DNA of 63,584 nt, the filler included, from Octopus bimaculoides (lineage: Eukaryota), in assembly GCF_001194135.2 (NCBI RefSeq). It is 4 parts of 4 records of this genome, joined end to end, with 100 filler letters (N's around TTAATTAATTAA, not from the genome) between each part and the next. Parts side by side here need not be neighbours in the genome. Positions count along the whole stretch, not along the records: positions 1 to 29,834 come from NC_068994.1; 3 more parts are not named here. One strand, given 5' to 3'. The notes beneath the pieces were generated by a model. The model made no database searches. It was not told the DNA's origin and saw nothing but the letters and a program-made list of their open reading frames with translations. The position numbers and the translations under genes were made by a program. Position 1 is the first letter of the stretch; each line of letters opens with the position of its first letter. Below, piece after piece: positions 4,886 through 28,114 of the stretch.

Positions 4886-6848
4886 TTAAAGCAGTGGTTC
4901 TCAACTATTTGATTCCTATTTTATTCTGGTGGACCCCCATAACCATGCAATATTTTTAAATGAGTTTTATAGATATTTCCTTCAAAATTCCTATTTTGTT
5001 TTTCACACATCATCAACTTGTGTAGTTTGAACTATATAAAACATTAGAGAAAGGAACCTAGCTGTTTTTTGCAGTAAATACATCTAAAGCAAATTTTTTC
5101 AGAGACCCCTAAAATACTACTGTGGATTCTCAATAAGCACATGAATATTGCACCCTATTAAACCCCAATAAAACAGTAGGCTCCTATTAAGATGCTAATT
5201 AGGCCCACTAATTAAGCTACTGAACAAACCACAGATCAAAACACTGATCAATTCAATGATTAAACTACTTATTAAACCTATTGATTAAGTCATAAGCAAT
5301 GAATTGACAGTCATTAGAGCATTAGATAAAATAACTTGTGGTGTTTGCTCCAACACCCTATACACTGAGTTCAAATCCAGCCAAGATCAACTCTGCCTTT
5401 CAGGTTCAATAAAAAAAAATTTTAATACCAATATAAGTACCAGCATGACTGTGTGGCATGGAGGTACATGGCTTAGTGGTTAAGGATTTTGCCTCATGAG
5501 CATAAGGTCGTGAGTTCAGTTCTTGTTGGTATGTTGTGTCCTTGAGCAAGACACTTTATTTCATGTTGTTCCAGTCCACTCAGTTGACAAAAAAGATTTG
5601 TACCTGCATTTCAAAGGGCTAGCCTTCTCACCTGTGTCATACCAAATCACCCTGAGAACTACGTTAAGGGTACGTGTGTGTGTGTGTGTGTGTGTGTGGA
5701 GTGCTCAGCCACTTGTATGTTAATTCCATGAGCAAGTTGTTCCATTGATCAGATCAACTGGGACCCTCATGATCGTAACTGTTGGAGTCCCAGTTATAGT
5801 TGTATGGTTAGAAAGCTTGTTTTGCAATCACATGGTTTTGGGTTCAGTCCTTCTGCATGGCACCTTAGGCAAGTGTCTTCAACTATAGCCTTGGGCCAAC
5901 TAAAGCCTTATGAGTGGATTTGGTAGACAGAAACTGAAAGCCCATTTTATATACATAAATACATGCATGTGTGGGAGGACAGGGGTCTTCATGTCTGTAT
6001 TTGTCCCCTCACCACTACCTGACAACAAGTGTTGGCTTGTTTATGTCCCTGTAACTTAGTGGTTTGGCAAAAGAGACCAATAGAATAAATACCAGAATTT
6101 ATAACAAATAAGCACTGTGGTCAGTCTGTTCATTTTAAACTCTTCAAGGTGGTGCCCCCAACTTGGCCACAGCAGTGACTGAAACAAATAAAAGATATAT
6201 ATCGCAGACAGTGCATTCACAGAAATGTAAGTATGTTGGACCGCACATTTTTGGAATTATTTTTACATTCTGAGTTCAAATCCTGGTATGGCCTATTTGG
6301 GTGATACATTTTATCAGACATCACCACCACCACTACATGGAAATTTTGAGTGCCTTTAGCAGAGTTCACTTTGTTGTAAGCATTCAGTCCAGGTCTCTAG
6401 TTGAGGGTACCTTCCAACCTCCTTTCTTCTCCTCAGTCTTAGAAACCCTATAAAAAGTCATGGGTACCACCTTCCCCTTCTGACTAAAATCATCAGCAGC
6501 AGCATCTTCATCTTCATCATTGTTTAATGTTCATTTTCCATACTTGTGCTAGCATGAGTTGGATGGTTCAAGAGAATTTGACAAGTCAAAGGACGGTACC
6601 AAGCTCCAATGTTTGCCTTGGTACAATTTCTATAGTTTTTACAGTTGGGTACCCTTCCACAGAAAAAGATAGAAAAATAGAAAATATAAATATTGACAAA
6701 CTACAGATTAAATTAATTATTAAAAGCTCTGATTAAACATATTGATTAAATATGTGAAAGAATCACCAAAGAAGGAGAAGAAGGATTTCAATAATGTAGA
6801 ATAAGGCTTTTCCTTTTAAGAATTTGGAAGACTTTACTCTTTTTTTTT

Positions 6849-7112: not shown

Positions 7113-7289
7113 ATATATACATATATACGACGGGCTTCTTTCAGTTTCCGTCTACCAAATCCACTCACAAGGCTTTGGTGGGCCCGAAGCTATAGTAGAA
7201 GACACTTGCCCAAGGTGCCACACAGCGGGACTGAACCCGGAACCATGTGGTTGGTAAGCAAGCTACTTACCACACAGCCACTCCTGCAC
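6849..7289 (-). mobile_element. SINE family B (tRNA-like head, CORE-like GGCACCTTGGGCAAG, internal (TA)n), full length
   Basis: Other copies 2320-2478, 5800-6195, 10720-11065(-), 11225-11437, 15650-15810, 21045-21310(-), 23818-23885, 29377-29768, 48010-48350(-). The internal (TA)n often coincides with assembly gaps. Confidence 0.88.
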
Positions 7290-7299
7290 CTTTGATAAT

Positions 7300-7528
7300 T
7301 TTACCCTTTAGTATTTAAACTGACCATATCCGGCCCAAATATTTTACCTATTTTATGCTCAAACTGGCCAGGTCCAGCTTCTCACACCTATCCTACTGTG
7401 TCATTCTAAAATGTAAACAATCACATCATCAAACTCCTGAAGCTACCAGATAATGCATGGTCAATTTAAACCAATGTGAACAAATGAACATAACACTTGA
7501 TAGAGCAATCTGATTGCTAAAGGGTTAA
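7300..7528 (-). mobile_element. piggyBac-type MITE family 1, full-length copy
   Basis: ttACCCTTTAGTATT...TTGCTAAAGGG-TTAA. Confidence 0.85.
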
Positions 7529-7747
7529 TAATTAACCAATTGACAAATAATAAAGAAGTGAAATAGAGCCAGTGCATGTTTATTATTGGAATAATGACCT
7601 TCCTAAGATACAGCAAAATTATGCAGACCATGTGTGATTCCTTATTGTTTTGCACAATGTTAAATCAGTAAAAGGATGTTAAGTTAGTAAAAGACATTGA
7701 GTTAGTAGTGTTAAGTCTATAAAAGAAAATAAGAGAGAAAGAGATAA

Positions 7748-8232
7748 TGATGACAACAGATGATGATGATGACATCAGATGATGATGATGAAAACAGATG
7801 AGGATGATGACAACATCAGATGATGATGACATCAGATGATGATGACAACAACAGATGATGATGACAACATCAGATGATGATGATGACAGTAGATGATGAC
7901 AACAGATGATGATGATGACAACAGATGATGATGATGATGATGACAGCAGATTATGATGACAACATCAGATGATAAAGATGGAAACAGATTATGATGACAA
8001 CATCAGCTGATGATGACAACATCAGCTGATGATGACAACAGATGATGATGACAACAACAGATGAAGATGACAACATCAGATGATGATGACAACAGATGAT
8101 GATGACAACAGATGATGATGATGACAACAGATGATGATGATGACAACAGATGATGATGACAACAGATGAGGATGATAACAACAGATGATGATGATGACAG
8201 TAGATGATGACAGCAACAAATGATGATGAAGG
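7748..8232. repeat. Cryptic (GAT)n-GACAACA minisatellite
   Basis: Variable units such as GATGATGATGACAACA. Confidence 0.9.
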
Positions 8233-8400: not shown

Positions 8401-8636
8401 CGAGTAAAAGCATTGAAATAGTCATCAGGTAGTAAATTTGGCACTGACAATGCTGTCTGCTGATACCTTATAAAGATTTGATTCATTAGGTCACGGAAAC
8501 CTTTCACATCTGGTTGAAATGCAATTCGGTCAATTTTAAGAAGTAAGTCAGTTCTAAACAGAGGATTCAATACCCTGTTCTCTTCCTCTGGCTCTTGAAT
8601 AAATATATCAAGAGTCTCGGGGTTAAAGTCAGTTTT
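8401..8636 (-). CDS. DNAH6: DNAH6-like exon (phase 0 to 2), absent from the ORF track
   Basis: ttttttcag|AAA ACT...ACT CG|gtaaga; 236 nt open; ends PLFRTDLLLKIDRIAFQPDVKGF...LSVPNLLPDDYFNAFTR vs recalled DNAH6 LSVPNLVPDSYFDAFTS. Confidence 0.93.
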
Positions 8637-9316: not shown

Positions 9317-9452
9317 TCTTTTAATTACTGTCTTTGAAAAACTAGGAGCATTGTTCAATAATTCAGCAAAATAGGCAAGTAAATTCCGTACAGCATCAAT
9401 AACAAGTTGACGTAAAGCAGAAACAATGATATAATCAAGATAGCGAATGAAA
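9317..9452 (-). CDS. DNAH6: DNAH6-like exon (phase 2 to 0)
   Basis: tttttccag|T TTC ATT CGC...AGA|gtaaga; 136 nt; FIRYLDYIIVSALRQLVIDAVRNLL vs recalled DNAH6 FIRLNDYLIENTMHILTVNAVNSLL. Confidence 0.92.
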
Positions 9453-9736
9453 CTGGAAAAATAAAGAAAAAAAAAACAGGAAAATAAGGACAAGCACAGA
9501 GTAGAGTCAGTAAAATCAATAAACAAGTGCAGTCTTCAGGAGCACATTTACTTAGTGATTTCCTTATCACTAGTTTGACATGTGTAGTGAAGTCTATCCT
9601 TTGTTGAGGATGTCTAATTAGAATAAAACATGACCAAAGTTCACTCCCTTACTTGCCAGTTCAATTTCTATCAGATGTTTAGAAAAGTTATATATACATT
9701 TGAAAACATAAAATAGTGAAGTTTGGATCAAATTAG

Positions 9737-10179: not shown

Positions 10180-10902
10180 ATTAAATGTTAAGTACTTCAA
10201 GCCAATCTTCCTAATCAAAACCTCTTGTTTTTAATCAAAAAGCAACTTCTGCAAGTCATACAATCTCTTACTGTGCCTTCAAAATATTGGGATCTTCTAA
10301 CAGTCTATATACTACACTCTACTAATGAATTTAAATACCACATCAGATAATAAAGTTCAATATCAAAATAAACTATAATTTTCTGTTATTCCATAACACT
10401 AAGTACCAGATTCTCCAGCCCAGACTTTACCTTCCAATTTCATTACTTTACCTTCCAATTTCAGTGTTGCTATGGATTACCCTAAAATACTATTCTATCA
10501 ACCCTTTAATATTTAAACCAGCCATACCATTCTGTTTTATGTTCAAACCAGTCTCTCACACTCATCTTAAACTAGCATTCTAAGAATAAACAATCACATC
10601 GTTGAAATCTTGAAGCTATGAGATAAACCATGATTAATTCAAAACAATGTGAATAAATAAGCATTACATTTGACAAAGTAATCTGAAAGCTGAAGGACTA
10701 ATTGTTCTTGTGAAACCATTGTTATTAAACATGTGCTGGGGTGGTGCTGCCTTGAAAAGTTTCATTGAACAAATCAACCTTGGTACTTATTTTTACGCCT
10801 GGTATTTATTTTAATGCCAAAGCCCCAAGTTATGGAGAAGTAAACAAACTAACAGCAGTTGTCAAACAGTGGTAAGAGTCAAATGCAAACACACACACAC
10901 AT

Positions 10903-10993
10903 ATCAAGATAGCGAATGAAACTGAAAAAATAACGAAAAAGAACATAAAAATAAGGATAAGCACGGCCTAGAGTCAGTAAAATTAATAAACAA
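10903..10993 (-). repeat. Local duplicate of dynein intron/exon junction 9434-9526
   Basis: ATCAAGATAGCGAATGAAACTG identical (22 nt); the intronic part aligns with scattered changes through TAGAGTCAGTAAAAT.AATAAACAA. Confidence 0.92.
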
Positions 10994-11581
10994 CTGTATA
11001 TATACACACACACACACATAGAGTTTCCACACAATTTCCAGGTACCAAATTTATATATAAGGAATTTATAGGGGCACATTATAGATTTTTATTGAAATCC
11101 AATTAGCCTATTATTGAACTGGACGTTAGTGTAACATGTATGCAAAGTTTCATGAATATTGGTTCACTGGTTTAGGCACTAAGATGGTAACAGACAGACA
11201 GAAATTGCCATTAATATATTAGATGTGTGTGTGTGTGTGTGTGTGTGTATTTATCCCTCCATACTGCTTGACAGTGTTGGTGTGTTGGTCTGTTTACATC
11301 CCCATAACTTAGTGGTTTGGCAGACACCAATACAATAGGTACTAGGCTTACAAAAAAAAGGCCTACAATGATTTGTTTGACTCTTCAAGGCGGTGCTCCA
11401 GCATGGCTGCTGTCACCTGACTGAAACAAGTAAAAGAGTATCATTGAAATCTCAAAGTTATGACATTATGCATGATTAATTCAAAACAATGAAAATAAAT
11501 AAGTAGAACATATGACAAAATAATCTGAATGCTAAAGGGTTAATAATATTTAGAAGACTTTAAAAATAAATCCAAACAAAC

Positions 11582-11636
11582 CTTGTAAGCCTTTGGCAAA
11601 CAGCATATTTATTTTTCTTTGGTTTAACTCCAGGTA
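11582..11636 (-). CDS. DNAH6: DNAH6-like short exon (phase 1 to 2)
   Basis: T-rich tract gatttttgtag|TA CCT...ACA AG|gtttgt; 55 nt; VPGVKPKKNKYAVCQRLT(S) joins FIR, matching recalled DNAH6 KRHYCMRLTCFIR; bridges the phase-1 donor at 14034 and the phase-2 acceptor at 9452. Confidence 0.8.
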
Positions 11637-12159
11637 CTACAAAAATCAACAATGATAAATTAAAAGTAAGAGGTGAAAATATATCTCCCATAATTTTCTT
11701 TATTTTATACATCTTCTCAAAATATGATCAGCTGAATGTAGCAAGCTAATTTCTAATAATACTTGCTACAATTTCTAATAATGCTTTCAGGCACAAGGCC
11801 TGAAATTTGGTAGAAGGAGCTAGTCAATTACATTGACCACAGTGCTTGACTGGTACTTATTTTATCAACCCTGAAAGGATGAAAGGCAACTCGGAACATG
11901 AAGACAGATGAAATGCTGCAAAGCATTTCACCTGGCATGCTAACGATTCTGCCAGCTCGCCACCTTAAGTTAATTTTTAATAATTAGGTCCAACTTTTGT
12001 TGATCTCTGAGTTTTGGGATATAAAAAATACAACTGGGATATTGTAAAAGAAACTAACAGTAAGGAATTTTGTCAAAAATGGATATAAATTAAACTTTCA
12101 CTGTTTGTCTAACCCCTTAAATACCTGGCTTCATGCCACACTTAAACATTTTTATAATT

Positions 12160-12649: not shown

Positions 12650-13700
12650 TCATTATTATTCCTTCGCAACACAGTGTAGGTAAAAATGCACCGGAGTCTT
12701 TAGTCATCTGTCAAGTCACAAGGACCTCAGACAGATAATACTTTCCTTAAGATGTGTACTGTGCCCAGTAAGGCTGCTTTTTGCAAGACATGAATCTTGC
12801 ATGGGATTTCCAGTTGCCTTAAGAAGTTTTGAAGTTTCAATGGGATTGAGCCCAACGCTCCGACTACCACTGGTATCACTTTTACATTACCCTCTCGCAT
12901 TCCATACAGTCTTGCCATTTCCACTTTCAATTCAGAGTACTAGGTGATTTTTTTCAACCTCTTTACTCACAGCATTCATGTCATTTGGTATGGCTACATC
13001 AATTAAATGACAGTATTTGTCTCTCTTACTCAATATGACAATATCCAGCCGACGGTGTTTGATTACACAATCCGTCTGGAAATTATAGTCCCAGAGTATC
13101 GTTACTTTTCCATCCTCCTGCATAACTTTACTTGGTACATGCTCATACCAGTTCTCTGTTACTTCATATTGGTATTTATGTCATAAGAGCCAATGAAGAT
13201 AAATACGCATTTTATTGTGACGGCACTTGTATTCTTTTTGTGCAAGGCTCTCACGTTCACTTACCAAGTAGGTCACATTTTCCACTCTCTTTCCACACAG
13301 TCTGCATTTCTGGGTGTCAGAAGTTTTATAGATGTTATACCTCACTGAATTGGTAGTGAAAGCCTGGTCTTGTGCAGCAATGATCAGACTTTCAATGGTA
13401 CGCTTCAAATCACTTCACTCAAGCCATGCCCATGATGCTGTATTATCCTTAATGTCCTGTGTATTCATTTCAAACTGTCCATGCATTCTTATTTCAAGAA
13501 GATCTTTTCTCTTTTCCTCAGCTCTTTGGTTAAACTCTTCCTTGCCCATCATTTCATCTGCATTTATACCCATATCTTTCATGGCATATTGCAGCAGATC
13601 TTCATCACTAATTTATCAAATACTCGGTAAGCATTTTCCTTTCACTCCTTATACAATGCTCTATACTACTTAGCCCTCTGCTACCATTCTTTCTTTTTAT
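12650..13700 (-). mobile_element. 5'-truncated, decayed R4/Dong-clade non-LTR retrotransposon (CCHC finger plus RLE endonuclease)
   Basis: Frameshifted pieces AAQDQA..CRLCG..RH..HW, ILWDYNFQTD..HRR.DIV..IDVAIP.D, VIPVVVGALG..LQKAALLGT.HILRKVL; short 3' UTR ending in (TAA)n near 12650. Confidence 0.88.
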
Positions 13701-15254: not shown

Positions 15255-17318
15255 CTGATAAACAAAATGGGACACGTCTTACAAATACAGTTATATTTTA
15301 AGCGAACAGCAACAGAAATATATATGCGATGTACCCCTGATTGTCAGCTATCACAAGGGAGACAATCCCTTCTCAATTAAGTTAAGTTGAGGCAGGTTTG
15401 GAAGTCTGAAATTTAAATCACAGTGTAACAGTATACAGAACATACACATTTAATATTTCTTTTTCCTCCATATTATAAAGATCTTCCAGTCTTTGGTAGC
15501 CATGTATAGCACCATTTCATCCTTCTTCATCAGCACAACATAACCCAAGGCAAATAAATTAAGCTAAGTTAAACACTTTTACATTCTAGAAATAAACAAT
15601 CACAATATCAAAGTTATGAGATAACGAATGATAAATTTAAACAATATAAATAGGCACGGCTGTGTGGTAAGAAGTTTACTTCCCAACCACATGGTTCCTG
15701 GTTCAGTCCTATTGCATGGCACCCTGTGCAATGTCTTCTGTGATAACTTTGAGCTGACCAAAGCCTTGTGAGTTGATGTGGTAGACAAAAACTGAAAGAA
15801 GCCTGTTGTATATCTATATGGTGGTGGTGGTGGCAGCGGTGGTGGAGAAGAAGAAGAAGGGGTAATATTTATCCCCACTTAAATGTGGCTGTTCTGTTAA
15901 AACATATTTTACTGTAGTAGATACCTTGAGAGAAATTCTCATAAAGAAACTATGAGAGAAACATTAAAACAGAAAATAGAAGGGTGCATTTTTCACCCAA
16001 AGCCTATATGAAAGTTTCTCTCATGGTATCTACCACTGTATAGTTTGTTCTAACAGAACATCCATGTTTAAGTGGGAATAAATATTACTTCTCAGTATTA
16101 ATATTGCCTCTGTCGCTATTATATATAAGAATTATATTGTTTTATGTTTTTATCCAGGAAAATACATCATTGAATTCCAAAAGCCTTTCAAATCATAACA
16201 AACTCATCTAGTAAAATGTCTGTTATGTCTCATATACAAATTACAATCTAAATGAAATCATCACTGTATGTTTTCAATGGTCATTTGAGTCAAAGAACTT
16301 TCACCTGTTTCTGTCTCCTTGTCTCACCATAACCTTTCATCATCTGACACAAGATCACCGCCTCCAATTCCTCCTCCCCTCTCAAAAGACTTTTGTCTTG
16401 CAAGTTACTTGGTGACCTTGTCAGTGCAGGTGCCACTTAAAAAGCATCAAGTTCACACCGTAAAGTGGTTGGCATTTGGAAGGGCATCCAACTGTAAAAA
16501 CCTTTCCAAAACTGACCTTGCCTGTGCTTGTGCCATGTAAAAAGCACTAAGTCCACTCTGCTGCATGATTGGTGTTAGGAAGAGCATCCAGCTGTAAAAA
16601 TCCTGCCAAAACACCAAACGTCTGGTGCAGGCTTCTTCCTGGCTGGCTCCTGTCAAGCCATCACCGCCATGCCACCATGAGAGGTGGATGTTAAATGATG
16701 ATGATGATATATATATTTCAACAATTAATCAACAACTGTGATGTGTATGCATCACACATATATTGCCAACCATATTGCTTCAATATTATCCCCAATTGTA
16801 TTCCCTAAAGTTGTATTTTATTCCTTCTCCACACTAACACCATCAAGAATTCACTAGTAATGAACGCTTTTTTCAGTTCAATAAATTACAGCTTGGACTG
16901 GTTTTAAGCCATTTAGAAAGATTTGTTCAAACTGGGCTCCATGCCAAGAGATGGTCCTACACACATGCTTGTGCAGAGTATGCTATGATGAGTTTTTACT
17001 ATACCATTGTGGCTAATGGTGGAGCCACAAGCCCTCAACACTTTTTGACAGGGACTGACATACTACAAAAGCATAAAACATCAAGCTTCAGCTCTTGAAG
17101 AGTAGAGGGCCCTAATGGCAATTCTCTAATTAGGCTCGCATTTCCTAGTACCAGCCCTGACTATAACTAAGATAATGGTCTTTAGATTGCATTTAAGTTT
17201 TTCTCTTGTAAGAAAATGTATTGTTTTTTTTCTTAAAGTTTGCACCCCCTTGTATGAAGCTCAAAATATATACAAAAACATAGAAATGCTCATAAATAAA
17301 CAATTCAAAAGTTCTTAC

Positions 17319-17900: not shown

Positions 17901-18664
17901 TAAAAGAAGACTTATATTCAACATATAATAGCACATCAAAAATTCTTCCATGCCATTGTAGTAAACATCCAAAATCAACTAAGCTACATTATTGTAATAC
18001 TTCAGTAAGATGGCGAGCTGACACAATCATTAGCACACTAGGTGAAAAACTTAGCAGTATTTTGCCTGTCTCTACATTCTGAGTTCAAATTCTGCCGAGG
18101 TCAAATTAAGTACCAGTGAAACACTGGGGTCGAAGTAATCAACTAGTGCCCTCTCCCCGAATTTCAGACTGTGTGCATTCAGTAGAAAAGATTATTGTAA
18201 TAGTTCAGTAATACTAGAAATAATTTTTCATCTAAATCTTATTTTTAAATGAAAGGTCAATGATATTAATTAAAGTAATTAGGGAAAATACTAAAGATCT
18301 AAAAATAATGCTTATGTGCTAGCATTTAAATTTGAACAAATTTTCCAGAAAATTACTTTATATATCTTTATTGTAAGCTCTCATAAAAGAGATTATAAAA
18401 CTCAGTTTAAAAACACTGCTTTCTCTTACTATCTGTAGTTTTTGCTGTTTTTTATCTTATGTCCTTCAAACCATCTTAGATACTTACATAAGTTTCAGTC
18501 AAAATTGGCCCACCCCATGACTAAATAGCACCAAAACCCCCCAAAAACCCATACCCATCATTTGTATGCAACTATGACCTGGTTTTTAGCTGGAGTTTTT
18601 GTTGTTTTTTTTCTTTTTCAATTTCCTAAAATTTTCTATTATCCTTAAAAAATAAAAGCCTCAC

Positions 18665-18812
18665 CTTTCTAATTTTGGAAAAATTGATATAATCTTGCTG
18701 CCACTCATCGAGTTCAGTGAATTCTGGTTCATTGTTTGCCAAATATTTCATAACACCACGAGTGCTAATAGTGGAGTAATTATTTCGGTCAATATCAACA
18801 TAATGGACAACT
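18665..18812 (-). CDS. DNAH6: DNAH6-like exon (phase 2 to 0), absent from the ORF track
   Basis: ttattcaacag|A GTT...AAG|gtgagg; 148 nt; VVHYVDIDRNNYSTISTRGVMKYLANNEPEFTELDEWQQDY vs recalled DNAH6 VVSYENINKNDYYTISQRAVTHIYNEDIEFIEIDRWEQEY. Confidence 0.93.
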
Positions 18813-18925
18813 CTGTTGAATAAAGTAAATACCGTTGATTAATATGAAATTAAAGCATATGAAACAATTCTTTTAAACACCCACACACATACACACACAC
18901 ATATATTGCAGAAAAATACGTTACC

Positions 18926-18998
18926 GGCCAGCCATGAGACTCGAACTCACATCTCTGTGATTACGCGTCAAGTGTTTTACCATTAAACTAAACTGCCC
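18926..18998 (-). tRNA. tRNA-Thr(CGT)-like sequence, gene or pseudogene, intronic
   Basis: 73 nt; acceptor stem GGGCAGT/GCTGGCC (1 mismatch, 1 GU), D stem GTTT/AAAC, loop CGCGTAA, T arm GTGAG-TTCGAGT-CTCAT; anticodon stem only partly paired; no SINE body follows. Confidence 0.5.
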
Positions 18999-20978: not shown

Positions 20979-21737
20979 GCTCAGAGAAAATATTCATGTC
21001 AATAACATTGTATAAACTTCTTAACTGTTACTCAAACATACTCTTTTACTTGTTTCAGTCATTTGACTGTGGCCATGCTGGAGCACCGCCTTTAGTCGAG
21101 CAAATCGACCCCAGAACTTATTCTTTGTAAGCCTAGTACTTATTCTATCGGTCTCTTTTGCCAAACTGCTAAGTTACAGAGATGTAAACACACCAGCATC
21201 GCTTGTCAAGCAATGTTGGGGGGGGGACAAACACACACATATATATATACATATATACGACAGGCTTCTTTCAGTTTCCGTCTACCAAATCCACTCACAA
21301 AGCTTTGGTCNNNNNNNNNNNNNNNNNNNNNNNNNNNNNNNNNNNNNNNNNNNNNNNNNNNNNNNNNNNNNNNNNNNNNNNNNNNNNNNNNNNNNNNNNN
21401 NNNNNNNNNNNNNNNNNNNNNNNNNNNNNNNNNNNNNNNNNNNNNNNNNNNNNNNNNNNNNNNNNNNNNNNNNNNNNNNNNNNNNNNNNNNNNNNNNNNN
21501 NNNNNNNNNNNNNNNNNNNNNNNNNNNNNNNNNNNNNNNNNNNNNNNNNNNNNNNNNNNNNNNNNNNNNNNNNNNNNNNNNNNNNNNNNNNNNNNNNNNN
21601 NNNNNNNNNNNNNNNNNNNNNNNNNNNNNNNNNNNNNNNNNNNNNNNNNNNNNNNNNNNNNNNNNNNNNNNNNNNNNNNNNNNNNNNNNNNNNNNNNNNN
21701 NNNNNNNNNNNNNNNNNNNNNNNNNNNNNNNNNNNNN

Positions 21738-23390: not shown

Positions 23391-24194
23391 CAGATAACAT
23401 AAATTCACACATTATCATATTCTTAGGTAATTTCATTTAAAAACATTTCCATTTCAAGACCTAATTAATTCTCTCACACATTTTCAGCTGACAACTTGAA
23501 ATGCAAATCTAAATATTTTTGCGTAGGAATAAGCAACTCTGTTTCAAATTTCAGACGGAAAAGATTCTCCCATATTCCACAAACACTTTGATAAATGATC
23601 ACAAAGTCTCACTTCATCTTCCCTATAAATCTAAGCAGCTGTAGTTGTTGGAGGTGGCAGCTGCAGCAGTAGTGGTGGTGGTACTGCTGCTGCTGCTATT
23701 AGAAGTGGTTCTGCTATAGGTAATGACAGTGGGGGTTTCCTAGCCAGCAGCTCTGTTTCAACACACCCATGAGGAGGAGGTAAGTGATCAAATATGAATT
23801 CTGTTTGGAACTTTTAGCTAGGTGTGGCTATGTGGCTGAGAAGCTTGCATGGTTTTAGGTTCAGTCCCACTGCACAGCTCATTGAACACGCACACACACA
23901 GATAGATAGATAGATAAATATCTTTTTATTATAGCCACACAGGGCTAAATACAGAAAATGGACAAATTACAAAGTAGAGCTTTTCTTGTGGGGGGGGGGG
24001 GATAAGGTCTACAGTAGTATTTTAAAAGCAATTGAAAAAATTTTACTTTAGATGTATTTATTGCCAGAAACAGCTGGGTTTCTTTCTCTAATGTTTTACT
24101 TAGTCCAACATGTTTCCAGCCACTGAAACATGTTCTTTTAAAGAGTACTATTGCAAATCTACACAAGTAGAACCCATTTCAAGATGTCACTTAC

Positions 24195-24925: not shown

Positions 24926-25029
24926 NNNNNNNNNNNNNNNNNNNNNNNNNNNNNNNNNNNNNNNNNNNNNNNNNNNNNNNNNNNNNNNNNNNNNNNNNNN
25001 NNNNNNNNNNNNNNNNNNNNNNNNNNNNC

Positions 25030-26198: not shown

Positions 26199-28114
26199 AG
26201 CTGGTAGAAACGTTAGCTCACAGGGTGAAATGCTTAGTGCCATTTCATCAGTCTTTACATTCTGAGTTCAAATTCTGACAATTCTGCCTTTCATCCTTTT
26301 GGGGTCAATATATTAAGTACCAGTTGCAAACTGAAGTCGATCTAATCGACTAGCTCCCTCCCCAAAAATTTCGGGCCTTGTGCCTAGAGTAGAAAAGGAT
26401 ATTTTTTTCATTAGTGCAAGTTTCAGTTCTTCCTTATCAAGTTTTTGTCATTATTATTAACTCAGGCAAGGGTGGCAAGCTAGCAGAATTGTTAGCATGC
26501 TGGTCAAAATGTTTAGTGGCATTTCATCCATCTTTGTGTTGTGAGATCAAATTCTGCTGAGGTTGACTTTGCCTGTCATCCTTTCAGGGTTGACACAATA
26601 TGTACCAACTAAGCACTGGAGTCAATACAATTGATTTATCTCAACCCAAAAAATTGCTGGGCTTGTGCCAAAATTTGAAATCATTATTATCTCAGGTGAG
26701 GGTGACAAGCTGGTAGAATCATTAGTACAGTGCGGTGAGCTGGCAGAAACATTAGCACGCCAGGTGGTATGCTTTCGTCTGCCGTTACATTCTGAGTTCA
26801 AATTCCGCCGAGGTCGACTTTGCCTTTCATCCTTTCGGGATCGATAAATTAAGTACCAGTTACACANNNNNNNNNNCATCCTTTCGGGATCGATAAATTA
26901 AGTACCAGTTACACACTGGGATCGATGTAATCGACTTAATCTCTTTGTTTGTCCTTGTTTGTCCACTCTATGTTTAGCCCCTTGTGGACAATAAAGAAAT
27001 AAGAATCATTAGTACACTGGATAAAATGCTTAGTGACATTTCATCCATCTTTACATTTTGAGTTCAAATTCCGCTGAGGTTAACTTTGCTCTTCATCCTT
27101 TCAGGGTCAAAAAAGTAAATATCAGCTGAGCATTGATGGAATTGACTTACCCCTCACTTAAAACTGATGGCCTTCTGCTAAAATTTGAAACCATTATCAG
27201 CTCAGGCAAAGGCAGTGAGCTGACAGAATTGTTAGCATGTTGGAAAAACCGCTTAGTGACATGTCTTCCAGCTCCATACATTCTGAATTCAAATCCTGCT
27301 GAGGTCAAATTTGCCTTTTATCCTTTAGGGGCTGATAAAATAAAGTACCAATCAACTACTGGGGTCAATGTAATCAACTAGCTCCTTCTCCTCAAAGTTC
27401 AGTTCCTTGTACCTATATTAGTTTCGAATTTTGGTACAAGGCCAGCAATTTCAGGGTAAGGGTTAAGTCGATTACATCACCCACAGTGCTCGACTGGTAC
27501 TTGTTTCATTGACCCCAAAAGGCTGAAAGATAAAGTTAACCTCAGCAGGATTTGACCTCAGAATGTAAACAACCAGAAGAAATGCTATTTAGCATTTTGT
27601 TCAACACAATAATGATTTTAATAATTAATAATAATAATCCTTTCTATTATAGGTACAAGGCCTAAAATTTGAGGGAGGGGTCTAGTTGATTACATCGACC
27701 CCCAGTNNNNNNNNNNNNNNNNNNNNNNNNNNNNNNNNNNNNNNNNNNNNNNNNNNNNNNNNNNNNNNNNNNNNNNNNNNNNNNNNNNNNNNNNNNNNNN
27801 NNNNNNNNNNNNNNNNNNNNNNNNNNNNNNNNNNNNNNNNNNNNNNNNNAAGAAGAAGAAGAAGAAGAAGAAGAAGAAGAAGAAGAAGAAGAAGAATGGT
27901 TTCAAATTTTTCCACAAGGGCAGCACTTTTGGGGGAGGGATTAAGTCGATTACATTGACCCCAGTGTTCAACTGGTACTTATTTTATCGCCTCTGAAAGG
28001 ATGAAAGGCAAAGTCGACCTCAGCAGAATTTGAACTCAGAACCTAGTGGCAGGCAAAATACCACTTAGCATTTCGCCCAGTGTGCTACCGATTCTGCCAG
28101 CTCGCCACCTTAAC

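What the first reader, a model, noticed from the sequence alone, without database searches (positions are those of the whole stretch)
10720..11065. Possible birth of an in-frame microexon: a dynein splice acceptor copied into a SINE microsatellite
Seen: 91 bp spanning the polypyrimidine tract, AG and first 19 nt of exon 9452 are duplicated 1.47 kb upstream in the same intron (10903-10993), inside the (CA)n/(TA)n core of a family-B SINE. The copied AG is intact and comes first in transcription order. The adjoining (GT)n gives AT|gtgtgt, one mismatch from GTGAGT, defining a 21-nt phase 2-to-2 exon (10901-10921). Inclusion yields CQRLT-SFIRYLD-I-FIRYLDY, an in-frame 7-aa tandem duplication. Read-through without that donor gives SFIRYLDMCVCVCI*, a poison isoform. 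The 22 nt at the junction are unchanged while the intronic part has diverged. Inference: templated repair at a fragile microsatellite can create microexons or decoy acceptors.
Basis: partly seen in the sequence, partly recalled or inferred. Interest (0 to 1): 0.75.

Follow-up and report, generated by a model that had tools for sequence, protein, structure and literature searches.

The report
Splice acceptor copy in intronic SINE
A 94-base copy of a dynein gene's splice acceptor really does sit inside a repeat element 1.5 kb upstream in the same intron, but all available RNA shows only normal splicing, so it is most likely an old, silent by-product of DNA repair and not a newborn exon.

Summary
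A 94-nt segment (10903-10996, minus strand) copies the branch-site-like motif, polypyrimidine tract, AG and first 19 nt of exon 9452-9317. The gene is a DNAH6-type axonemal dynein heavy chain. The copy lies 1469 nt upstream in the same intron and interrupts the internal (TG)n(TA)n microsatellite of a 5'-truncated SINE that has the gene's orientation. The pair is far beyond chance (E = 8e-26). All 13 DNA runs of the species that hold the stretch carry the copy's exact words. A sister species about 3-4% diverged also carries it. Divergence (11 substitutions and one indel) dates it to roughly four times that split.

RNA gives no support for use. The only run of this species that expresses the gene, and two runs of a related species, each hold a single transcript contig joining 11582 directly to 9452. 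Contigs drop rare isoforms, and the raw-read runs barely express the gene, so minor use is not excluded.

The best reading is a fixed, silent templated insertion at a microsatellite break, which left a pseudo-acceptor. This is a new member of a known kind, of low to moderate interest.

The parts
10903..10996 (-). The copy: a 94-nt duplicate of a 3' splice-site module, made of a TACTGAC branch-site-like motif, a polypyrimidine tract (25 of 30 pyrimidines), cAG and the first 19 exon nt
   Evidence: for the alignment (E = 8e-26). for the pyrimidine count. for single-copy depth.
9434..9529 (-). The source: the last 77 nt of the intron plus the first 19 nt of exon 9452-9317
   Evidence: The exon boundary at 9452 is confirmed by the X1 transcript contig.
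10901..10921 (-). Hypothetical 21-nt in-frame microexon (TTTCATTCGCTATCTTGATAT); no RNA evidence of use
   Evidence: One search shows it is in frame and open. Searches show no contig containing it.
10889..10902 (-). AT(GT)6 half of the interrupted SINE microsatellite. It contains the candidate donor TAT|GTGTGT (6 of 9 matches to MAG|GTRAGT).
10997..11018 (-). (TG)7(TA)4 half of the interrupted SINE microsatellite, 5' of the copy on the sense strand
10749..10888 (-). Body (3' half) of SINE copy 'a' (family Y), in the same sense as the gene
   Evidence: A species D contig bridges the unique flank 10703-10748 into 10749-10789.
11019..11063 (-). Diverged remnant of the head (5' half) of SINE copy 'a'. 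The element is 5'-truncated here.
   Evidence: alignment with the post-microsatellite part of copies c, d and f
11071..11447 (+). SINE copy 'b', inverted relative to 'a': a different head-type repeat at 11071-11222, (TG)n at 11224-11250, and the body to 11447
   Evidence: (inverted repeats I1, I2), and the depth profile
11582..11638 (-). Upstream exon, donor AAG|GTTTGT. The true acceptor is probably 2 nt inside, at 11636.
   Evidence: (X1 contig record 1244-1300)
9317..9452 (-). The real exon, whose acceptor was copied. It encodes SFIRYLDYIIVSALRQLVIDAV..., which aligns to human DNAH6 residues about 429-470.
8401..8636 (-). The next downstream exon of the same dynein gene
   Evidence: (X1 contig record 1437-1672; X23 and X24 too)
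10576..10702 (.). A copy of a second high-copy short repeat (family X); another lies at 11440-11544. It is context only and not part of the duplication.
   Evidence: (D1), and depth

Best explanation
What it is (shown): a small intrachromosomal duplication. About 94 nt spanning the branch-site-like motif, polypyrimidine tract, AG and first 19 nt of an exon were copied in direct orientation. The gene is a DNAH6-type axonemal dynein heavy chain. The copy landed 1.47 kb upstream in the same intron, at the (TA)n/(TG)n transition of the internal microsatellite of an older, 5'-truncated SINE.

How it arose (inferred): the microsatellite broke or stalled a replication fork. The lesion was repaired by copying a nearby stretch of the same locus and then rejoining in the microsatellite. 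This is a templated insertion of the MMBIR/FoSTeS or polymerase-theta end-joining type. Junction homology is 0-2 nt (AT), next to a TATAT run in the source flank. The event is old, about 18-24 My on an octopus TE clock if the organism is an octopus, against about 5 My for the split from species B. It is present in every sampled individual of species A that holds the stretch.

What it does now (inferred from RNA contigs): nothing detectable. It is a pseudo-3' splice site that is not joined to the upstream donor in the predominant mRNA. Likely reasons are as follows. The only frame-preserving exon is 21 nt, too short for ordinary exon definition. Its donor lacks the -1 G. It is embedded in UG repeats and between inverted SINEs. 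At most it is a weak kinetic decoy or a source of rare NMD-bound transcripts.
For: The duplication and its exact placement are shown. Other family-Y copies have a continuous microsatellite, and so do many genomic contigs that skip 10904 to 10997. The insert is single-copy while its flanks are high-copy. There is independent assembly support, and all 13 species-A DNA runs that hold the stretch carry the copy. Species B carries it, with 5 substitutions and 1 indel, linked to the same unique flank by contigs 10889-11018 and 10991-11102. The SINE itself is present in species D. Divergence is JC 0.127-0.171 for copy vs source, against 0.03-0.04 for A vs B. The clock comes from PMC13282606. There is no poly(A) and no target-site duplication other than the microsatellite itself. 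The canonical 11582-to-9452 junction is the only one in X1, X23 and X24. There is exactly one contig per run over each flanking exon, and X1 depth is zero on 10910-10993. Templated insertions at breaks are a well-described class (PMC8421209, PMC5068794, PMC4032859).
Against: Silence is shown only at contig level. Assembled contigs discard minor isoforms. Only one RNA run of the species expresses the gene. The three raw-read runs have about 0-1 read on the exon.

The splice signals are not obviously worse than real ones. The copy's tract has 25 of 30 pyrimidines, against 27 of 30 for the source and 20-22 for two other real exons. Its donor matches 6 of 9 consensus positions, against 7, 6 and 6 for three real donors of this gene.

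The 22 nt around the AG are unchanged from the source in A. In B the copy shows no difference from A's copy within 10903-10923 (P is about 0.03 under a uniform rate).

The repair mechanism is inferred from anatomy alone. Junction microhomology is ambiguous, no empty site was recovered in an outgroup, and an RNA-templated origin is not excluded.

Predicted RNA structure that would hide the donor (P paired 0.99) is not discriminating, because the real donor is also predicted paired (P 1.00) and yet is used.
Confidence: 0.68

Rival explanations
1. One reading: the copied acceptor is functional at a low level or in a particular tissue. It would give either an in-frame 21-nt microexon adding FIRYLDI to the dynein tail, or a decoy or poison acceptor that lowers productive splicing, so that this is a proto-exon caught early.
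For: A complete 3' splice-site module is present, including TACTGAC and a tract with 25 of 30 pyrimidines. The donor TAT|GTGTGT matches 6 of 9 consensus positions, like real donors of this gene. The 21-nt exon is in frame and open. The copy is transcribed before the real acceptor and lies 660 nt from the donor, against 2129 nt. The 22 nt around the AG are unchanged from the source in A, and in B the copy shows no difference from A's copy within 10903-10923. Decoy exons are a known regulatory class (PMC7373989, PMC6097662).
Against: No contig in X1, X23 or X24 carries either junction, and exactly one contig covers each flanking exon. X1 has no contig on 10910-10993. The conservation signal is weak: P is about 0.16 once constraint on the source exon is allowed for, and the copy's A-B divergence (5.3%) is not below background (3-4%). 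The insertion would duplicate part of a conserved tail motif (RLT.FIR..DY). From general knowledge, 21-nt exons need dedicated enhancers, and UG repeats recruit repressors such as TDP-43; neither point was tested here.
Confidence: 0.12
2. An alternative origin through RNA. During target-primed reverse transcription of the SINE, the reverse transcriptase switched in the microsatellite from the SINE RNA to the nascent dynein pre-mRNA, copied 94 nt across the intron-exon boundary, and switched back. The insert would then be as old as the SINE copy.
For: The SINE copy and the gene have the same sense (minus strand), so SINE RNA and pre-mRNA are co-linear. The insert contains unspliced intron-exon sequence from the very locus being targeted. 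The SINE is 5'-truncated, as expected for reverse-transcriptase-mediated insertion. An error-prone reverse transcriptase could explain part of the 12-15% divergence.
Against: It needs two internal template switches that return to the same microsatellite register. A break within an existing microsatellite explains the contiguous flanks more simply. None of the five other family-Y copies in the window has such a filler. From general knowledge, known reverse-transcriptase chimeras usually arise by end-to-end jumps at the 5' end of the template.
Confidence: 0.12
3. A remnant of a larger tandem duplication of the exon (a failed mutually exclusive exon pair), later eroded and invaded by repeats.
For: Tandem exon duplication is a known route to alternative exons, and the copy is direct and upstream.
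Against: Homology stops 19 nt into the 136-nt exon, exactly at a microsatellite. No further similarity to 9317-9433 or to 9530 onwards lies anywhere nearby. Both flanks are the two halves of one SINE's microsatellite.
Confidence: 0.03
4. An assembly artefact or a chance similarity.
For: The region is repeat-rich and the piece contains N gaps.
Against: E = 8e-26. An independent contig spans 10662-11100. All 13 listed DNA runs that hold the stretch carry the exact words. The copy is present, with its own substitutions, in species B.
Confidence: 0.01

Closest known systems
Templated insertions at DNA breaks or stalled forks (MMBIR/FoSTeS; polymerase-theta end joining)
   Same: A short stretch (tens to hundreds of nt) copied from a nearby donor that is itself retained. 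It is inserted at a discrete site with little or no junction homology, and repeats are typical break sites (PMC8421209, PMC5068794, PMC4032859).
   Different: This is an ancient germline event that is fixed or near-fixed in species A, known only from its scar. The polymerase or pathway cannot be assigned. Its length (94 nt) and distance (1.47 kb) are at the upper end for pol-theta scars and the lower end for MMBIR. The payload happens to be a splice-site module.
SINE/Alu exonization
   Same: A candidate new exon located inside an intronic SINE, with splice signals lying next to the SINE's low-complexity sequence.
   Different: In Alu exonization the splice sites evolve from the element's own sequence. 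Here the acceptor is imported ready-made from the host exon, and only the donor comes from the SINE's (GT)n. No inclusion is detected.
Decoy exons and pseudo splice sites within introns
   Same: An unproductive but well-formed splice site inside a >1 kb intron that could engage the intron-terminal donor (PMC7373989, PMC6097662).
   Different: Known decoy exons are conserved and are shown by reporters or antisense to cause intron retention. Here there is no evidence of conservation above neutrality, of intron retention, or of any effect.
Tandem exon duplication giving mutually exclusive exons
   Same: A direct duplicate of exon-boundary sequence in the upstream intron.
   Different: Only 19 of 136 exon nt were copied. 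The copy is not tandem and cannot encode an alternative version of the exon.
Regulated microexons (3-27 nt)
   Same: 21 nt and frame-preserving.
   Different: No inclusion is seen. The gene is a ciliary motor and not a neuronal microexon host. No dedicated enhancer context was identified (not tested rigorously).

Membership tests
Templated insertion (break or fork repair) | The inserted sequence has an identifiable donor elsewhere, and the donor is retained | tested here: met
   Source 9434-9529 is intact and used as the real acceptor
Templated insertion (break or fork repair) | The insert interrupts a sequence that is otherwise continuous | tested here: met
   Five other family-Y copies and many genomic contigs have an uninterrupted (TA)n(TG)n
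Templated insertion (break or fork repair) | Microhomology at the junctions | tested here: inconclusive
   There are 0-2 nt (AT) at the 3' junction and none clearly at the 5' junction. The boundaries are ambiguous within TA repeats.
Templated insertion (break or fork repair) | No retroposition hallmarks (poly(A), target-site duplication) | tested here: met
   No A-tail is present. The flanks are the two microsatellite halves and not a duplicated target.
Templated insertion (break or fork repair) | An empty (pre-insertion) site in an outgroup | tested here: inconclusive
   Species C and D contigs cover neither the copy nor the 11059-11072 flank. Short-read contigs break at the repeats.
Functional cassette microexon | Acceptor with polypyrimidine tract and AG, a GT donor, and a frame-preserving length | tested here: met
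   25 of 30 pyrimidines plus cAG; TAT|GTGTGT matches 6 of 9; 21 nt, in frame and open
Functional cassette microexon | Junction-spanning RNA showing inclusion | tested here: not met
   Only the canonical junction is seen in X1, X23 and X24, with one contig per exon. Power is limited to the predominant isoform.
Functional cassette microexon | Conservation above the neutral level across species | tested here: inconclusive
   The 22 nt are unchanged from the source in A, and B's copy shows no difference from A's within 10903-10923, but P is 0.03-0.16 depending on the model. The copy's A-B divergence (5.3%) is not below the 3-4% background.
Decoy exon causing intron retention | Retention of the host intron in RNA | tested here: not met
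   X1 depth is zero over the unique intron parts, including 10910-10993. This is contig-level evidence only.
SINE (family Y) | Short, non-coding and very high copy number | tested here: met
   About 350 nt in total, with at least 6 copies in 30 kb. Depth is about 5x10^5 over 11238-11324 against about 10 for single-copy sequence in X2.
SINE (family Y) | A pol-III (tRNA-like) head | tested here: inconclusive
   By eye the head has a box-B-like GGTTCAGTCCC. The Rfam tRNA model gives no hit on 7120-7300 even at E<=10. A tRNA hit at 18926-18997 belongs to a different element.
DNAH6-type axonemal inner-arm dynein heavy chain | Best sequence match to DNAH6 over other dynein heavy chains | tested here: met
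   Human DNAH6 8j07_g5 gives E = 1.5e-47, two further DNAH6 chains give 1e-45 to 1e-46, and the other dyneins give 1e-20 or weaker. Pfam finds no domain in this tail segment.

The most novel reading that the evidence does not exclude
The copied acceptor is a real proto-exon or decoy. In testis or ciliated cells a small fraction of DNAH6 pre-mRNA would be spliced to 10921. That would give either a 7-aa tandem repeat in the dynein tail or an NMD substrate. Templated repair at SINE microsatellites would then be a recurrent way of seeding ready-made host splice sites into introns in cephalopod-like, SINE-rich genomes.
Probability: 0.07. Interest if true: 0.6.

Novelty: new member of a known kind. 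Interest (0 to 1): 0.25.

Why it matters
If the copy were used, it would be a rare, datable example of an exon seeded by importing a finished host splice acceptor into a transposon, instead of by slow mutation of the transposon's own sequence. As the evidence stands, it is a clean single-locus illustration of two things. Microsatellites inside SINEs can capture nearby sequence by templated repair. And a well-formed pseudo-acceptor can persist in an intron for many millions of years without disturbing the predominant mRNA. That is useful as an anecdote for splice-site-fidelity and repeat-instability studies, but it is not a new mechanism.

Tried and rejected
1. Raw RNA reads (X6-X8) laid over the intron were swamped by microsatellite and SINE cross-mapping. 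The gene's exons had depth of about 0, so they give no power.

2. A search for long-read RNA libraries found none.

3. Presence or absence in species C and D could not be settled. Only the source contigs cross-map onto the copy, and the flank 11059-11072 is also uncovered.

4. Protein searches with 64-aa and 142-aa exon peptides found nothing, and Pfam found nothing. The gene was identified only after adding upstream open stretches and searching PDB sequences.

5. RNA structure was tested as an explanation for silence. The candidate donor is predicted paired with SINE b's (CA)13 (P 0.99). I rejected this as evidence because the real donor is predicted equally paired.

6. A tRNA origin for family Y was not confirmed by Rfam or ARAGORN.

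7. My first statistics used 13 substitutions. I corrected this to 11 substitutions plus one 2-nt indel.

8. The tandem-exon-duplication remnant and assembly-artefact readings were rejected.

9. The organism names are coded. I could not verify 'Octopus' independently, so the dates that use the octopus TE clock are conditional.

Full report
**Observation.** Reading the minus strand and aligning shows that 10903-10996 (94 nt) is a direct duplicate of 9434-9529 (96 nt), 1469 nt away. The source is the last 77 nt of an intron plus the first 19 nt of an exon. The two differ by 11 substitutions and one 2-nt indel, all within the intronic 74 columns. The last 22 nt (cag plus 19 exon nt) are identical. 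A self-BLAST of the whole 29.8-kb piece gives E = 8e-26. It shows this is the only dispersed direct two-copy duplication present.

**Gene and exons.** A 12,410-nt transcript contig in RNA run X1 (same species) lays on 11638-11582, 9452-9317 and 8636-8401 as consecutive blocks. This fixes the strand, the exon boundaries and the canonical junction. The three-exon peptide alone hit nothing. Joined to upstream open stretches, it matches human DNAH6 with E = 1.5e-47, far better than other dynein heavy chains. The duplicated codons lie in a conserved tail motif: C.RLT.FIR..DY in both octopus-like and human sequences. So 'dynein' is confirmed, specifically a DNAH6-type inner-arm heavy chain.

**Repeat anatomy.** BLAST and alignments of window copies define a family (here called Y) of about 350 nt. 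It has a head, an internal (TA)n(TG)n microsatellite and a body. Depth implies tens of thousands of copies.
- The copy around the finding ('a') is in the same sense as the gene. It is 5'-truncated, with only about 45 nt of head (11019-11063).
- On the sense strand it reads (TG)7(TA)4 | 94-nt insert | AT(GT)6-TTGC-body.
- The other five copies in the window, and many genomic contigs that join about 10904 directly to about 10997, have an uninterrupted microsatellite. The insert itself is single-copy.
- A tRNA origin of the head could not be confirmed.
- A second, inverted SINE ('b', 11071-11447) lies head-to-head with 'a'.

**Reality and age.**
- An independent DNA run (X2) has a 439-nt contig across 10662-11100 with one mismatch.
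- The insert's exact words are in all 13 listed DNA runs of the species that hold the stretch, from at least 10 samples.
- Species B (about 3-4% diverged) has contigs 10889-11018 and 10991-11102. They carry the insert with five substitutions and one indel, and link it to the same unique flank.
- Species D has the SINE at the orthologous site. In C and D neither the insert nor the adjacent flank is assembled, so their status is open.
- Copy-source distance is JC 0.127 overall and 0.171 for the intronic part. A-B distance is 0.03-0.04.
- With the octopus TE clock quoted in PMC13282606, this is roughly 18-24 My against about 5 My. That holds only if the organism is an octopus, which I could not verify because names are coded, and if copying was faithful.

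**Is it used?** The frame arithmetic is right. Acceptor 10921 plus donor TAT|GTGTGT gives a 21-nt open, in-frame exon that would add FIRYLDI. All other donor candidates within 400 nt give exons containing the stop in SFIRYLDMCVCVCI*. The signals are respectable. The tract has 25 of 30 pyrimidines (the source has 27 of 30). The donor matches 6 of 9 consensus positions (real donors here match 7, 6 and 6).

RNA does not show use.
- On a 201-nt stretch around the real acceptor, X1 (depth 63) and two runs of a related species E (depth 91 and 111) each contribute exactly one contig. Each contig runs from 9452 straight into exon 11582.
- Depth over both flanking exons in X1 equals that single contig.
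- X1 has zero depth on 10910-10993.
- A bubble contig for the +21 isoform would contain more than 30 nt of the real exon and would have been laid.

The limits are clear. Contigs drop minor variants. The only raw-read RNA runs (X6-X8) have 0-1 read on the exon in the 6% sampled. No long-read RNA could be listed. So the canonical form is the predominant isoform, but rare inclusion is not excluded.

**Is the unchanged 22-mer meaningful?** Under a uniform rate, the chance that none of the 12-13 differences falls in the last 22 columns is 0.026-0.035. If the source exon is constrained, so that only the copy can change there, it is about 0.16. Between species A and B the copy has 6 events in 10924-10979 and none in 10903-10923 (P = 0.14). 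Its overall divergence (5.3%) is not below the flanks. This is compatible with neutral drift.

**Origin.** The two halves of one microsatellite flank the insert. There is no poly(A) and no target duplication. The donor is 1.47 kb away in the same orientation. Junction homology is at most AT, next to a TATAT run in the source flank. This is the anatomy of a templated insertion at a break or stalled fork in a microsatellite, a well-described class. Because SINE and gene share the same sense, a reverse-transcriptase double template switch onto the nascent pre-mRNA during SINE integration is a possible alternative. It is less parsimonious, and it could be tested with an outgroup empty site.

**Structure.** The inverted SINEs, together with (CA)13 pairing to the (UG) tracts, give a strongly favoured predicted fold (551 nt, z = -5.4). 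In the whole-intron ensemble the candidate donor is paired with P = 0.99. The real donor is predicted equally paired and is nevertheless used, so I do not count this as evidence.

**Comparison and verdict.** It works like a templated-insertion scar that happens to carry a 3' splice-site module. It resembles SINE exonization and decoy exons only in potential. The defining feature of both, RNA evidence of use or of intron retention, was tested at contig level and not met. It is a new member of a known kind. It is real, old, present in all sampled individuals and probably silent. Interest is 0.25. The most novel reading not excluded, a low-level proto-microexon or decoy together with a general mechanism, has a probability of about 0.07.

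Noticed in passing
window 10815-10901 vs 11232-11322 (with (GT)6 at 10889-10900, (TG)7 at 11004-11018 and (CA)13 at 11224-11250): Two SINE copies lie in inverted orientation 330-430 nt apart inside the intron. They give a strongly favoured predicted pre-mRNA hairpin (551 nt, z = -5.4). This is the kind of intronic dsRNA that ADAR edits. A>G and T>C are the commonest differences in the RNA contigs laid on the window, but cross-mapping of repeats confounds this.
   Followed up: partly
window 12730-13612, minus strand: Four consecutive open stretches (65-82 aa each, e.g. ...VIPVVVGALGSIPLKLQNFLRQLEIP...) look like the decayed 3' end of a retroelement ORF. RNA contigs of species A and E lay on 12743-13681 at about 90% identity, so the family is transcribed. 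Pfam gives no significant hit.
   Followed up: partly
window 18926-18997, minus strand: An Rfam tRNA match above the gathering score (34.3 bits against 29) lies beside an (AC)n array at 18877-18905. ARAGORN calls no tRNA. It is probably the tRNA-derived head of a different SINE family and not a gene. It lies about 100 nt from the dynein exon-like stretch 18629-18838.
   Followed up: partly
window 7743-8229: A minisatellite of about 490 nt with a 19-nt period (GATGATGATGACAACAGAT, about 26 copies, 77% matches) sits in the intron just downstream of exon 8401-8636. It is open in several minus-strand frames as low-complexity peptide.
   Followed up: no
window 9439: The species B source contig showed G>T at 9439, which is CTT>ATT (Leu>Ile) in the FIRYLDY motif, when laid on the source. 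The corresponding mismatch was not listed when the same contig was cross-laid on the copy. It is unresolved whether this is a real exon difference between species.
   Followed up: partly
window 10889-11102 in run X3 (species B): The two contigs that carry the insert and its flank have depth of about 15, while neighbouring single-copy contigs have 33-37. This could be heterozygosity for a larger structural difference or just low depth of short AT-rich contigs. A simple presence/absence heterozygote is unlikely, because the flank contig is unbranched.
   Followed up: partly
window 11636-11638: The upstream exon as laid (11582-11638) is preceded by ...tttttgt and begins with AG. The true acceptor AG is probably 11637-11638 and the exon start 11636, with the 2 nt shared with the end of the previous exon.
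   Followed up: no
window 15862-16088; also 5027-5126 vs 24008-24108: There is a 229-nt self-inverted (palindromic) segment at 74% identity. Separately, there is a low-copy inverted pair 19 kb apart at 82% identity. Both are unexplained and are probably transposon remnants.
   Followed up: no
window 21311-21737, 24926-25028, 26867-26876, 27707-27849: There are assembly gaps (runs of N). The first cuts the head of SINE copy c (21020-21310), and several abut microsatellites. This shows that this repeat class breaks the assembly.
   Followed up: no
genomic contigs of species B laid at 10902-11001 (section 5c): Some other copies of the same SINE family carry non-repeat fillers of 30-40 nt between the two microsatellite halves (e.g. 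CTTATATTTTATATTTTACTTGTCATTAGTCAAATAATG). This hints that the internal microsatellite may be a recurrent insertion site. The donors are unknown.
   Followed up: no
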